Positions 6,255-19,298 of a stretch of 64,000 nucleotides of DNA are shown here, one piece after another (the first letter of the stretch is position 1; each line of letters opens with the position of its first letter). The stretch is taken from sequence record MG655267.1. One strand, given 5' to 3'. The translations under genes were made by a program, and so were the position numbers. Under the pieces are notes generated by a model. It saw nothing but the letters and a program-made list of their open reading frames with translations. It was not told the DNA's origin and did not search any database.

Positions 6255-6836
6255 ATGTCAAAGAAACTCGATACCCGTAAAAGTATGTTTCTGGCCTTGG
6301 TGTTACGTCACCGTCCTGAAGAGATCGGAATTACCCTGGATGAGAACGGCTGGGTCAAAGTCAGCGAAGTGATCACTGGGTTCACCTTTACCGGGCGTGG
6401 GCTCTCATTACCTGAGCTTGAGATCATCGTTGAGACGGATGAGAAGAAGCGTTACCAGCTCTCTGACGACAAGTGCTATATCCGGGCCGTGCAGGGGCAT
6501 TCTCACGAGAGCGTGATGAACATGCAGCTGGAAGTGGCGACACCGCCAAAGTACTTGTATCACGGCACCCAACAGATCTCCTGTGAATCGATCGAGCGAC
6601 AAGGGATCTTGCGCCTTAAACGTTTATATGTCCACCTAACGGATGACATCGAAGCGGCTTGGCGCGCAGCAACTCGTAAACGAACAGCCGGTGCAGTCTA
6701 CCGAATCGACACCGAGAAGATGACGCGGATGGGCCATGTGTTCTATCGCGCTGAGAACGGGGTCTGGCTGGCGAAGCGCATTCCTTTCTCAGTCATTGAG
6801 ATGGTTGATGCACATGACGAAGAAACAAGTACCTGA
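6255..6836 (+). CDS. kptA: RNA 2'-phosphotransferase (Tpt1/KptA family)
   Basis: LRH..EIGITLDENGW, IRAVQGHS, YLYHGT, KRLYVHLT, NGVWL motifs. Confidence 0.92.
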   Translation: MSKKLDTRKSMFLALVLRHRPEEIGITLDENGWVKVSEVITGFTFTGRGLSLPELEIIVETDEKKRYQLSDDKCYIRAVQGHSHESVMNMQLEVATPPKYLYHGTQQISCESIERQGILRLKRLYVHLTDDIEAAWRAATRKRTAGAVYRIDTEKMTRMGHVFYRAENGVWLAKRIPFSVIEMVDAHDEETST

Positions 6837-8521: not shown

Positions 8522-9655
8522 ATGCAGTACAGTACCTTTAATACCACTAAAAACGATCAGATGGCTGAACCGATGTTCCTGGGTCAGTCGGTTAACGTCT
8601 CACGTTATGATCAGCAGAAGTACCCCGCGTTCGAAAAGCTGATTGAGAAACAACTTTCATTCTTCTGGCGACCTGAAGAGGTGGATGTTTCGCAAGACCG
8701 TATCGACTTCCAGGGGCTGCCAGATCATGAAAAACACATCTTCGTTTCTAACCTGAAATACCAAACCCTGCTGGACTCGATTCAGGGTCGTAGCCCGAAC
8801 GTGGCATTGCTGCCGATCTGTTCTATCCCGGAACTCGAAACCTGGATTGAAACCTGGGCGTTCTCTGAAACGATCCACTCGCGCTCATACACCCACATCA
8901 TCCGTAATATCTTTACTGACCCCTCCATCGTGTTTGATGACATCGTGACCAACGAACACATCAAAGCGCGTGCTGAGTCCGTCACGGAGTATTACGACCA
9001 GCTGATCGAAATGACCATGTACCTCAACTTACTGGGTGAAGGCAGCCATGTAATCAATGGTAAGAAAGTCGTGGTCTCGATGCGTGCTATCAAACGCCTG
9101 GTCTACCTGTGCATCGTGTCAGTCAACGTGTTGGAAGCCATCCGCTTCTATGTCTCCTTTGCCTGCTCGTTTGCCTTTGCTGAACGTGAGCTGATGGAAG
9201 GCAACGCCAAGATCATTAAACTGATCGCCCGTGATGAAGCCCTGCATCTGACCGGCACTCAGCACATGATCATGTTGATGAAGTCCGGTGCTGACGATGC
9301 TGAGATGGCGGAAATCGTTAAAGAGTGTGAAGCAGAAACATACGCACTCTTTAAGGACGCTGCAGAGCAGGAGAAAGACTGGGCGAACTATCTGTTCCAG
9401 GACGGCTCGATGATCGGTCTGAACAAAGAGATCGTCTGCCAGTACATCGAATACATCACCAACATCCGTATTCGCGCCATCGGTTACGATGACATCTACA
9501 CCGGTGTCAAAGCTAACCCAATCCCATGGATCAACTCCTGGTTGGTTTCTGACAACGTGCAACAAGCCCCTCAAGAGTCAGAGATTACCTCGTATTTAGT
9601 AGGTCAGATCGACTCAACTGTCGATGCAGATGCGTTTGATAACTTCGAACTTTAA
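8522..9655 (+). CDS. nrdB: Ribonucleotide reductase class Ia beta subunit
   Basis: [19 protein letters not shown] (radical Tyr), [15 protein letters not shown] di-iron motifs; C-terminal SYLVGQID. Confidence 0.97.
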
Positions 9656-9712: not shown

Positions 9713-10546
9713 ATGTCTGAGATAAAAGATAACCCGGATAACTGGAAAGTGATTCCGGGTTACTCACGTTATGAGATCAACGAAGTCGGCGTTGTAAGAA
9801 AGATACATAACAAGAAGGTGATGAAACAATGGCTGCGTGGTAATTATACCGCCACTGCTATCACTTCTGATAATAAGTCAACTAGTAGAATAGAATCTAT
9901 TCATATTTTACTGTGCCTTACATTTATTGGTCCAAAGCCCTTACCTGAACCTGGGCACAAACTTGTTACCGCTAACCACAAGGACGGTAACAAACTTAAC
10001 AATGTGAGGTCTAATGTAGAATGGTTATCCAATTCTGGTAATATTCTGCATGCTTACAAGAACCGGCTAAATAAATCATCACAGCACCTGCGTCTAACCA
10101 ATGTGGTCTCTGGTGAAGTTGTCGACCTGCATTCTTACCGCGAATTATCCAAATGGATGGGTAATCCTAACCTGCGCGGAAGAATGGAGTATCTGAAGTA
10201 TCGCAACAAGCTTTATCAAGGTCAGTGGCGAATAGAACTTCTTGGCGAATCAGAGAAGTCTTCAGGGTCTCGTACCAGTAAACAAGTATGCGTAATGGAT
10301 GTGGCTAAACGACTTGGATTGAGGGAGGGTGAGTTTGATACTTTTATCTTTAATTCCATGCATGACGCCGCTGCAGCATTAGGCGTAAGTCGCAAAGGTA
10401 TTGGTCGATCGATTAGTACCAAAGGACGTCATGTTGTAAATGGGTACGCTATATCGCTATCATTTGACGATATGGCTAATATCACTTATGACAAAGCGTA
10501 TGTGGAGATTAGTCTTAAATGGGCGAAACTCAGGGGTCAGAAGTAA
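9713..10546 (+). mobile_element. Free-standing HNH homing endonuclease (NUMOD4-HNH-NUMOD1-like)
   Basis: WKVIPGYSRYEI (NUMOD4), NHKDGNKLNN..SNVEW (HNH), FNSMHDAAAALGVSR (NUMOD1-like); visibly more AT-rich than its neighbours. Confidence 0.9.
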
Positions 10547-10614
10547 GCTCTTATCTGGTCGGTCAGATCGACTCTAAAGTGGACGCCAACGATTTCGACG
10601 ATTTCCAACTGTAA
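10528..10614 (+). pseudogene. nrdB: Stranded second copy of the nrdB 3' end
   Basis: Translates [28 protein letters not shown], versus [28 protein letters not shown] at the end of nrdB; no start codon. Confidence 0.85.
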
Positions 10615-18985: not shown

Positions 18986-19154
18986 TAATTAAATACTAGA
19001 CAGTGTAATCATATACGTAAAGGGGTCTGGTGAAAGCCATATCCCTTTTGGTTATGCTGTCTTTTTTTTTGGTTAAGAAATACTAGCCTTCTCCATTATA
19101 TGCAATTTACACGATACACTTTTCTATTTATTACATCAGCAAGAGAGATAAGAC

Positions 19155-19298
19155 ATGAGCGCACCTGAAGAATTTGATATGGACGGCCTGGAATCACTGG
19201 ATCTGGAAGGCGCTGAGAAAGCGGCAGAAGAGAAAGCAGCCGGCGGTGGCGAAGCCCTGTCTGATGGCGAAGCAGATTGCGAAGGTTGCAAGATCTAA
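19155..19298 (+). CDS. 47-aa acidic peptide ending DCEGCKI; resembles a free NrdA C-terminal redox tail (not in ORF track)
   Basis: GAGAG SD-like site; MSAPEEFDMDGLESLDLEGAEKAAEEKAAGGGEALSDGEADCEGCKI*; phage-typical codons; fills an otherwise empty gap. Confidence 0.75.
   Translation: MSAPEEFDMDGLESLDLEGAEKAAEEKAAGGGEALSDGEADCEGCKI

What the first reader, a model, noticed from the sequence alone, without database searches (positions are those of the whole stretch)
19155..19298. Free-standing minigene that looks like the redox tail of ribonucleotide reductase NrdA
Seen: a 47-aa ORF below the ORF-track cutoff, with an SD-like site and phage-typical codons, encoding a very acidic flexible chain that ends ...DGEADCEGCKI-stop. 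Established: class Ia NrdA ends in an acidic flexible arm with a terminal Cys pair (E. coli ...DDGCESGACKI, C754/C759; CxxC in T4 and yeast). This arm carries reducing equivalents from thioredoxin/glutaredoxin to the active site, and in yeast Rnr1 it can act in trans between subunits. Inference: the phage expresses the arm as a separate diffusible peptide. It could be the missing piece of a split NrdA, a booster shuttle for phage or host RNR, or a decoy capturing host thioredoxin/glutaredoxin. nrdB lies ~9.5 kb upstream; nrdA is not in this window. I know of no description of such a stand-alone RNR tail.
Basis: partly seen in the sequence, partly recalled or inferred. Interest (0 to 1): 0.85.

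Follow-up and report, generated by a model that had tools for sequence, protein, structure and literature searches.

The report
Stand-alone ribonucleotide-reductase tail peptide
A jumbo phage that has no gene for the large subunit of ribonucleotide reductase makes a 47-residue acidic protein ending in that subunit's cysteine-pair tail, and the same tail turns out to be a portable tag on many unrelated phage proteins and on a small gene in the iron-sulfur operon of Neisseria.

Summary
The ORF is real. It is gp108 of Erwinia phage Bosolaphorus (Agricanvirus): 47 aa, pI 4.05, dN/dS 0.18-0.39 against relatives.

Its last seven residues, DCEGCKI-stop, are the same as the end of NrdA in large phage contigs. 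Its relatives end in CE[SG]G[AG]CKI, the exact end of enterobacterial NrdA (checked against tool-fetched E. coli, Erwinia, Serratia and Proteus sequences).

It is not a piece of a split nrdA. The whole genome has a host-like nrdB (76% identical to E. coli NrdB) but no nrdA. Serratia phage PCH45 shows the same pattern, and Yersinia phage fHe-Yen9-02 has neither gene.

The family is large and unnamed: 245 clusters of free 41-93-aa proteins, all labelled 'hypothetical'.

- In phages the tail is either free, behind an acidic helical head, or fused to unrelated domains, including the Acb4 (PF13876) family.
- In Neisseriaceae a free copy sits between iscS and iscU.

Best reading (confidence about 0.45): a tail acting in trans that plugs into the thioredoxin/glutaredoxin-NrdA thiol relay of the host. 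Rival readings are a docking tag or decoy, and an iron-sulfur-linked role. Function is inferred, not shown.

The parts
19155..19298 (+). gp108 minigene: 47 codons plus TAA. It encodes a small acidic protein of the 'NrdA-tail-only' family.
   Evidence: ORF and translation; annotated CDS AUG85895.1; phrog_10239 at E 9e-30; homologs; dN/dS 0.18-0.39.
19155..19241 (+). Acidic head, residues 1-29, with the recurrent motif [DE]-F-[DN]-[LM]-D-x-L-x-x-L-D-L. Predicted to be helical.
   Evidence: AlphaFold2 with the family alignment gives helices 9-13 and 17-29, pLDDT 68-77. The motif is kept in phage and Neisseria relatives and recurs in other free tip-bearing peptides.
19242..19250 (+). Gly-Gly-Gly hinge, residues 30-32.
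   Evidence: The two glycines at residues 31 and 32 are invariant across the phage and Neisseria members in alignment A4. The model becomes disordered from this point.
19251..19295 (+). Flexible acidic arm, residues 33-47, ending in the tip D-C-E-G-C-K-I (19275-19295). This is the NrdA-type C-terminal cysteine pair.
   Evidence: pLDDT about 50. The tip is identical to the NrdA ends ...AEDCEGCKI-stop in viral contigs L157, L199 and L244. Relatives carry the Cx4C tips of bacterial NrdA.
19142..19147 (+). Shine-Dalgarno-like AGAGAG, 7 nt before the ATG.
   Evidence: Read from the sequence. The stretch AGCAAGAGAGATAAG is identical in AH06. Translation itself is not shown.
18998..19070 (+). Long hairpin (18998-19062) followed by nine T: an intrinsic-terminator-like element between gp107 and the minigene. 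The minigene therefore probably starts its own transcript.
   Evidence: RNA fold gives -30.8 kcal/mol, z -5.4, with 0 of 200 shuffles as stable. The element is almost invariant between Bosolaphorus and AH06, although the flanks diverge. The simple terminator scan missed it because the stem is too long.
8522..9655 (+). nrdB, the class Ia RNR small subunit. It is the only RNR gene of the phage and the context for the proposed function.
   Evidence: Pfam PF00268 at E 7e-53. It is 76% identical to E. coli NrdB over its full length, including the C-terminal tail that binds NrdA. No nrdA is found in the genome.

Best explanation
gp108 is a genuine small protein built from three parts: an acidic helical head, a Gly-Gly-Gly hinge, and a disordered acidic arm. 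The arm's last residues copy the C-terminal cysteine-pair tip of the class Ia ribonucleotide reductase large subunit (NrdA).

The phage has no NrdA of its own. It brings a host-like NrdB and must use the host's NrdA (inferred).

In NrdA the tip swings between the active site, where it reduces the disulfide left by each turnover, and thioredoxin or glutaredoxin, which reduce the tip again (established knowledge; a solved complex of glutaredoxin-1 with this 25-residue tail is PDB 1QFN).

I propose that the free peptide enters the same relay in trans. Host thioredoxin/glutaredoxin take it as a substrate, and it can reach the NrdA active site while NrdA's own tail is away being re-reduced. That would support dNTP supply for a phage that provides only the small subunit.

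Shown: the gene, its conservation, the identity of the tip, the absence of nrdA, and the wide distribution of the module. Inferred: every step of the chemistry, and the partner of the acidic head.
For: - The gene is real and under purifying selection.
- The tip DCEGCKI-stop also ends NrdA in 5 viral contigs.
- Family members end in CESGAC.I, CEGGACKI or CEGGGCKI.
- Proteus, Xenorhabdus and Photorhabdus NrdA tails read ...EEVVE[SA].DSDCEGGACKI. The Klebsiella phage Miami peptide reads ...GGGEVVEASDECEGGACKI.
- A PDB search with the Neisseria member returns only NrdA C-termini (13 of 13 hits). The top hit is 1qfn_B, the R1 tail peptide bound to glutaredoxin-1.
- There is no nrdA in Bosolaphorus, PCH45 or fHe-Yen9-02. 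Host-like nrdB (76-80% identity, NrdA-binding tail kept) is present in the first two.
- The arm is predicted to be disordered.
- A small dithiol acting on the RNR active site adds to the activity given by the tail route (PMC4078304). This makes a helper acting in trans plausible.
Against: - No evidence of translation and no biochemical evidence exists.
- Profile searches with the phage peptides do not retrieve NrdA from the PDB or from 1.84 billion proteins. The likeness rests on the last 8-17 residues.
- The window's own tip is CxxC, whereas its host Erwinia has Cx4C. Tips do not track host NrdA tips in the four phage-host pairs compared.
- fHe-Yen9-02 carries the peptide without nrdB.
- The same tip sits on proteins with no link to RNR, such as the Acb4/PF13876 family. 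In Neisseriaceae the free gene lies in the isc operon although NrdA keeps its own tail. Both facts fit a more general docking or redox tag at least as well.
- The conserved acidic head has no assigned partner.
Confidence: 0.45

Rival explanations
1. Docking tag or decoy. The tip, with the hydrophobic-acidic stretch before it, is a portable short linear motif that binds whatever normally binds the NrdA tail (thioredoxin, glutaredoxin, or the NrdA active-site channel). Phages append it to various proteins to recruit or occupy that partner. The tail-only minigene then acts as a competitor that holds back host RNR re-reduction or sequesters thioredoxin/glutaredoxin, rather than as a helper.
For: - In viral contigs 38 of 70 matches to the Cx4C tip are not on NrdA, and the same holds for roughly 25 of 92 matches to the CxxC tip. 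They sit on free peptides with several head types, on Acb4-family (PF13876) proteins (4 confirmed by Pfam, E 6e-15 to 9e-28), and on other unrelated domains.
- At least four unrelated N-terminal domain classes carry the full head+hinge+tip module.
- The same kind of tail copying is described for a phage protein ending in a tip like that of E. coli SSB (bioRxiv 10.64898/2026.10.27.754916).
Against: A phage that brings its own nrdB (Bosolaphorus, PCH45) is unlikely to want RNR throttled. No binding data exist. This reading does not explain why both cysteines are invariant if docking alone is needed.
Confidence: 0.25
2. Iron-sulfur or metal-handling peptide. The acidic head binds a component of the Fe-S assembly machinery or iron. 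The cysteine pair then accepts sulfur or a metal, or delivers electrons to a persulfide. In phages it would serve iron loading of NrdB or phage Fe-S enzymes.
For: - In six Neisseria-type loci (five Neisseria records and one short mislabelled contig) and in Eikenella the free gene lies about 70 nt upstream of iscU. In the loci that reach far enough the order is iscR-iscS-minigene-iscU.
- A radical-SAM gene lies three genes downstream of the peptide gene in fHe-Yen9-02.
- NrdB needs a di-iron centre (established knowledge).
Against: - The phage genomes examined show no isc genes near the minigene.
- The Moraxella copy is not in an isc operon.
- The tip is the NrdA tip to the residue, which a generic metal site would not require.
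- No Pfam or NCBIfam match to IscX, CyaY or other Fe-S accessory proteins.
- The weak cysteine-desulfurase match of P0025 is far below cutoff.
Confidence: 0.12
3. The missing C-terminal piece of a split or tail-less phage NrdA (genes in pieces, as in Aeromonas phage Aeh1).
For: Only the tail likeness itself, and the fact that RNR genes of this phage are visited by a homing endonuclease (HNH gene right after nrdB). The precedent is PMC3045599.
Against: A tblastn search of E. coli NrdA against the complete genome gives no hit (best E 1.7). The same is true for PCH45 and fHe-Yen9-02. No NrdA is annotated in any of the 321 features. The Neisseria and phage free forms coexist with NrdA proteins that keep their own tails.
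Confidence: 0.01
4. Precursor of a ribosomally made, modified peptide: an acidic leader, a Gly-Gly cleavage site, and a Cys-containing core.
For: The layout looks superficially like a leader, a double glycine and a short Cys-bearing core.
Against: No modifying enzyme, peptidase-transporter or immunity gene lies next to it in Bosolaphorus, AH06, PCH45, Miami or Neisseria. The module also occurs at the end of larger cytoplasmic proteins. The core is identical to an enzyme's tail.
Confidence: 0.03
5. A chance or decaying ORF without function.
For: It is short. The bare C-x(2-4)-C-x-x-stop pattern occurs by chance in 11 of 3100 ORFs of this genome.
Against: dN/dS is 0.18-0.39, length and tip are conserved across genera, and there are 245 clusters of relatives.
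Confidence: 0.02

Closest known systems
C-terminal redox tail of class Ia ribonucleotide reductase NrdA (E. coli R1; the tail peptide bound to glutaredoxin-1 is PDB 1QFN)
   Same: It has an acidic flexible stretch ending in two cysteines followed by Lys-Ile-stop. Family members carry the identical eight residues CESGACKI, CEGGACKI or CEGGGCKI.
   Different: It is not attached to an NrdA catalytic domain. Instead it is preceded by its own conserved acidic helical head and a Gly hinge. The window's own copy has two residues between the cysteines instead of four.
NrdA of large (T4-like-size) phage contigs ending ...DGAGEEEAEDCEGCKI
   Same: The last seven residues, DCEGCKI-stop, are identical to those of gp108.
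   Different: Those are full-length NrdA proteins of about 750 aa. gp108 is 47 aa, in a genome without nrdA.
Genes-in-pieces nrdA of Aeromonas phage Aeh1 (PMC3045599)
   Same: It is a phage RNR large-subunit function spread over separate polypeptides, in a genome where homing endonucleases visit RNR genes.
   Different: There both halves of NrdA are present and reassemble. Here no NrdA body exists in the phage.
Redox partner fused to RNR: the glutaredoxin domain on NrdB of Facklamia ignava (PMC6187632, listed)
   Same: It is another natural rearrangement of the RNR electron-delivery chain.
   Different: That case fuses the reductant to the enzyme. Here the enzyme's own acceptor arm is detached and made portable.
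Copied C-terminal tips of hub proteins, such as the SSB-like acidic tail on a phage protein (bioRxiv 10.64898/2026.10.27.754916)
   Same: It is an acidic disordered tail with a short conserved tip, reused on unrelated phage proteins.
   Different: The tip and presumed partners differ. The NrdA-type tip carries a redox-capable cysteine pair.
Acb4 / PF13876 family of phage cyclic-nucleotide sponges (bioRxiv 10.1101/2024.12.30.630793)
   Same: Some PF13876 proteins in viral contigs end in the same tip (...DDCEGCKI or ...DDNCEGGGCKI).
   Different: gp108 has no PF13876 domain. The link is only the shared tail.

Membership tests
NrdA (class Ia RNR large subunit) C-terminal redox tail | A cysteine pair within the last 10 residues, followed by two residues and the stop codon. 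| tested here: met
   The protein ends ...D-C-E-G-C-K-I-stop. Both Cys, the Glu after the first Cys and the final Ile are invariant or nearly invariant in the family.
NrdA (class Ia RNR large subunit) C-terminal redox tail | Tip sequence as found in real NrdA proteins. | tested here: met
   DCEGCKI-stop ends NrdA in 5 viral contigs. Relatives carry CESGAC.I, CEGGACKI or CEGGGCKI, as in 111 of 120 sampled bacterial nrdA ends.
NrdA (class Ia RNR large subunit) C-terminal redox tail | The tail is the end of a protein with the NrdA catalytic barrel. | tested here: not met
   The protein is 47 aa with no Pfam match. No NrdA-like sequence occurs anywhere in the genome.
NrdA (class Ia RNR large subunit) C-terminal redox tail | An acidic, flexible linker before the cysteines. 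| tested here: met
   15 of 47 residues are acidic. Residues 30-47 are modelled without secondary structure, pLDDT about 50.
NrdA (class Ia RNR large subunit) C-terminal redox tail | Thiol-disulfide exchange with thioredoxin/glutaredoxin and with the NrdA active site. | not testable with these tools
   No complex prediction or assay was available. There is only the precedent of 1QFN for the authentic tail.
Split (genes-in-pieces) NrdA | The remaining NrdA fragment(s) are encoded elsewhere in the same genome. | tested here: not met
   A tblastn search of E. coli NrdA against all 272 kb gives a best E of 1.7. The annotation lists only the beta subunit.
phrog_10239 (phage protein family of unknown function) | A full-length match to the family profile. 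| tested here: met
   E 9.3e-30, residues 1-47 on profile positions 1-47. The fused relatives match it with their C-terminal 40-47 residues.
Double-glycine-leader modified peptides (RiPP precursors) | Neighbouring modification, cleavage or export genes. | tested here: not met
   Neighbours gp107, gp109 and gp110 have no such Pfam domains. None appear in the AH06, PCH45, Miami or Neisseria contexts.
Fe-S assembly accessory proteins (IscX, CyaY and the like) | Sequence membership in a known accessory family. | tested here: not met
   No Pfam or NCBIfam match for the phage or Neisseria peptides. Only gene position in Neisseriaceae points that way.

The most novel reading that the evidence does not exclude
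The C-terminal tip of NrdA is a portable short motif. With it, phages of Proteobacteria (and Neisseriaceae themselves) connect arbitrary proteins to the thioredoxin/glutaredoxin-RNR thiol relay. The tail-only minigenes would be diffusible arms that let a phage without its own large subunit tune the host enzyme's re-reduction step. The tagged proteins (Acb4-family sponges and others) would use the same docking site for recruitment or redox control.
Probability: 0.35. Interest if true: 0.85.

Novelty: new variant of a known kind. Interest (0 to 1): 0.72.

Why it matters
The re-reduction of RNR by its own C-terminal arm is textbook chemistry, but the arm has been treated as part of the enzyme. 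Here it appears in three new settings:

- as a free gene product in phages that lack the enzyme's large subunit;
- as a tag on unrelated phage proteins, including a family known to counter CBASS immunity;
- as a conserved small gene inside the Fe-S assembly operon of Neisseriaceae.

If the arm works in trans, this is a new way for viruses to steer host dNTP synthesis. It would also be a new class of small protein acting on the thioredoxin/glutaredoxin system.

It also gives a concrete sequence handle, the tip plus the stop codon, for finding such proteins. Gene callers and family databases currently leave them as 'hypothetical'.

Tried and rejected
- Pfam, NCBIfam and PDB sequence searches with the phage peptide or its profile gave no match.
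- The profile search of 1.84 billion proteins found more family members but no NrdA.
- BLASTP of gp108 against E. coli NrdA does align the two C-termini, but at E 0.29.
- The search for related loci on viral contigs returned only 5 loci.
- A search for homologs of gp43, the weak free counterpart of one fused N-domain, returned only itself.
- The AlphaFold model of the fused protein P0012 gave a moderate N-domain with no informative PDB fold match (best E 0.035).
I used A3 instead and did not resend those rows.
- The conserved upstream box CCATTATATGCAATTTACAC is not repeated in the window, so no promoter class could be assigned.
- The simple promoter/terminator scan saw nothing near the gene.
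- Literature searches for the tip strings and for the Neisseria isc operon gave nothing on these peptides. The paper on Erwinia phage RAY does not mention the gene or RNR.
- Host-matching of tips was considered and rejected: tips do not follow the host's NrdA tip.
- About 60 of the 92 DCEGCKI matches in viral contigs belong to a single non-acidic prophage ORF family, up to 134 aa as read stop to stop (...TYLDCEGCKI). I regard it as unrelated.
- A likeness of the acidic head to the NrdB C-terminal tail was considered but could not be tested. It is left as speculation.

Full report
**What is there.** The window is part of Erwinia phage vB_EamM_Bosolaphorus (MG655267.1, genus Agricanvirus; window position = record position - 62000).
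- At 19155-19298 (+) lies a 47-codon ORF that ends ...DGEADCEGCKI-stop. It is already annotated as gp108, 'hypothetical protein'.
- The product is very acidic: 15 Asp+Glu, 3 Lys+Arg, pI 4.05, 4.8 kDa.
- An AGAGAG stretch lies 7 nt before the ATG.
- Upstream, a long hairpin (18998-19062, -30.8 kcal/mol, z -5.4) followed by nine T looks like the terminator of gp107.
- The whole intergenic stretch is almost invariant between Bosolaphorus and the divergent phage AH06.

**Is it a gene?** Yes.
- All Agricanvirus records carry it at the same length. AH06 has a 74%-identical copy.
- Metagenomic relatives at 83-89% identity keep the frame and the end.
- Pairwise dN/dS is 0.18-0.39.
- It matches phrog_10239 from first to last residue.
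- The bare pattern 'two cysteines near the end' is not significant on its own: 11 of 3100 six-frame ORFs of this genome have it. The argument rests on the specific tip.

**Is the end really the NrdA tail?** I fetched comparators with tools only. The phage nrdB DNA found E. coli nrdB, and the neighbouring nrdA gave the E. coli tail ...SIQDDGCESGACKI-stop.
- *Family ends.* A profile of the peptide family searched against 1.84 billion proteins found 17 proteins. Besides CEGCKI, their ends read CEGGGCKI, CEGGACKI, CESGACSI, CESGGCMI and CGGACSI. Serratia phage PCH45 has CESGACEI and Klebsiella phage Miami has CEGGACKI.
- *Bacterial scan.* I scanned one genome per bacterial species for CE-x-G-[AG]-CKI-stop. 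The output was limited to 120 loci.
  - 111 loci are the 3' ends of nrdA. They include Erwinia, Pantoea, Yersinia, Serratia, Klebsiella, Proteus, Vibrio, Shewanella and Alcaligenaceae.
  - 7 are small free-standing ORFs of the Neisseria type: six in Neisseria records and one on a 778-nt contig filed as Terrabacter.
  - 2 look like chance matches.
- *A longer match.* NrdA tails of Proteus, Xenorhabdus and Photorhabdus read ...EEVVE[SA].DSDCEGGACKI. The Miami peptide reads ...GGGEVVEASDECEGGACKI, so the likeness can extend over about 17 residues.
- *The window's own CxxC version.* A scan of viral contigs for DCEGCKI-stop found five NrdA proteins ending ...AEDCEGCKI or ...PDDCEGCKI.
- *PDB.* A search with the Neisseria member returned 13 hits. 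All are NrdA C-termini aligned end to end, and the best is 1qfn_B, the R1 tail peptide solved in complex with glutaredoxin-1.
- *Against.* Searches with the phage peptides alone do not pull out NrdA, and BLASTP of gp108 against E. coli NrdA gives E 0.29. The relationship is limited to the tail.

**Is it a piece of a split NrdA?** No.
- A tblastn search of E. coli NrdA against the whole 272-kb genome gives nothing (best E 1.7). NrdB is found at 76% identity, including the C-terminal residues that bind NrdA. The annotation lists only the beta subunit.
- Serratia phage PCH45, a distant nucleus-forming relative with the peptide, shows the same pattern: NrdB 80% identical to E. coli's and no NrdA.
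- Yersinia phage fHe-Yen9-02, an unrelated jumbo phage with the peptide, has neither gene.
- So three of three examined carriers lack nrdA. The peptide can only meet a host NrdA.

**Anatomy of the module.** Alignment of phage and bacterial members shows four parts:
- an acidic head with hydrophobic residues in a helical rhythm ([DE]-F-[DN]-[LM]-D-x-L-x-x-L-D-L);
- two invariant glycines;
- an acidic arm;
- the tip.

AlphaFold2 with the family alignment gives helices at residues 9-13 and 17-29 and no structure after the glycines (mean pLDDT 64).

**Distribution.** A profile search restricted to small proteins found 245 clusters of 41-93 aa, every one labelled 'hypothetical' where it is labelled at all.
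- *Phage members.* They come from jumbo phages of Erwinia, Klebsiella, Dickeya, Serratia, Yersinia, Salmonella and Proteus.
- *Full module on larger proteins.* The module also ends proteins of 127-296 aa with at least four unrelated N-terminal domains. One of these domains has a weak free counterpart in Bosolaphorus, gp43.
- *Tip alone.* It is even more widespread. In viral contigs 38 of 70 Cx4C-tip matches are not on NrdA, and the same holds for about 25 of 92 CxxC-tip matches.
  - Some sit on free peptides with other heads.
  - Some sit on proteins of the PF13876 family. A recent preprint identifies that family as Acb4 cyclic-nucleotide sponges that block CBASS.
  - Others sit on further unrelated proteins.
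- *Neisseriaceae.* The free gene lies about 70 nt upstream of iscU. In the loci that reach far enough the order is iscR-iscS-minigene-iscU (five Neisseria records, one short mislabelled contig, and Eikenella). Neisseria NrdA keeps its own tail. Moraxella has a copy elsewhere.

**How it most likely works.**
- *From a paper.* A small dithiol acting directly on the active site adds to the activity delivered through the tail, because the tail must leave to be re-reduced (PMC4078304).
- *Inference.* A free copy of the arm could be charged by the host reductants and serve host NrdA in trans. That would suit phages that bring only the small subunit or no RNR at all.
- *Confidence.* I give this about 0.45.
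  - The portability of the tip and the isc context fit a wider role as a docking or redox tag (0.25).
  - They also fit a role tied to Fe-S assembly (0.12).
  - The partner of the conserved head is unknown.

**Novelty.** Searches of the paper library for the tip strings, for phage RNR tails and for the Neisseria isc operon found no description of such proteins. The family databases carry no name for them. The motif itself is known. Its detachment and reuse are not, so I file this as a new variant of a known kind.

- a few letters of the E. coli NrdA C-terminus;
- short C-terminal peptides of a mammalian small subunit;
- short C-terminal peptides of a herpesvirus small subunit.

Every comparison above uses sequences returned by tools.

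Noticed in passing
window 9713-10546 (HNH gene gp90) and 10531-10611: Right after nrdB sits an HNH/NUMOD4 homing-endonuclease gene. It is followed, in another frame, by a second copy of the last 27 codons of nrdB (70% identical to E. coli NrdB residues 350-376). Relatives without the HNH gene (Ea35-70, Deimos-Minion, Desertfox, MadMel, Rebecca) use that second copy as the real end of nrdB. The cassette therefore brought its own replacement end, which is a homing footprint.
   Followed up: partly
L123:885-1022 (-), L106:5054-5191 (+), L029, L039, L109, L147:5001-5147: Neisseria species and Eikenella carry a free gene of about 42-48 aa (...LDLDNLDNLLEDFDG.TVEGG...DDGCEGGACKI). It lies about 70 nt upstream of iscU, and where the locus reaches far enough it sits between iscS and iscU. 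It is annotated 'hypothetical' or not called at all.
   Followed up: partly
L193:1913-2266 (-), L234:5055-5408 (+), L224:441-758 (+), L184:1753-2106 (+); also L287, L297, L307, L311, L313, L317: Proteins of the PF13876 family (Acb4 anti-CBASS sponges) in several viral contigs end in the NrdA-type tip (...DDCEGCKI or ...DDNCEGGGCKI).
   Followed up: partly
window 18998-19112: The intergenic stretch before the minigene is almost identical in the divergent phage AH06, while the coding flanks differ. It holds a very stable hairpin plus T9, and a box CCATTATATGCAATTTACAC that occurs only once in the window.
   Followed up: partly
L004:11344-11655 (record MG655267.1 41343-41657, gp43; outside the window): gp43 of the same phage is a weak homolog (E 2.5e-4, 28% identity) of the N-terminal domain that is fused to the tail module in the metagenomic proteins P0012 and P0018. 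This may be a 'Rosetta stone' partner of unknown function.
   Followed up: partly
L160 and about 60 other viral-contig loci: A non-acidic ORF (up to 134 aa stop to stop; 69 aa from the first ATG in L160) that recurs in many 20-50-kb prophage-like contigs also ends ...TYLDCEGCKI. It looks unrelated to the acidic family and may be a spurious reading frame.
   Followed up: no
window 6255-6836: There is a Tpt1/KptA RNA 2'-phosphotransferase gene (PF01885, E 2e-39). An RtcB-like ligase gene lies elsewhere in the genome. In Yersinia phage fHe-Yen9-02 the tail peptide gene lies two genes before a Tpt1 gene.
   Followed up: no
L146:4786-5153: In Moraxella nasibovis the 50-aa family member overlaps by 4 nt the end of a 72-aa ORF of unknown function, which suggests translational coupling. 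A DsbC-like thioredoxin-fold gene lies 1.5 kb away.
   Followed up: no
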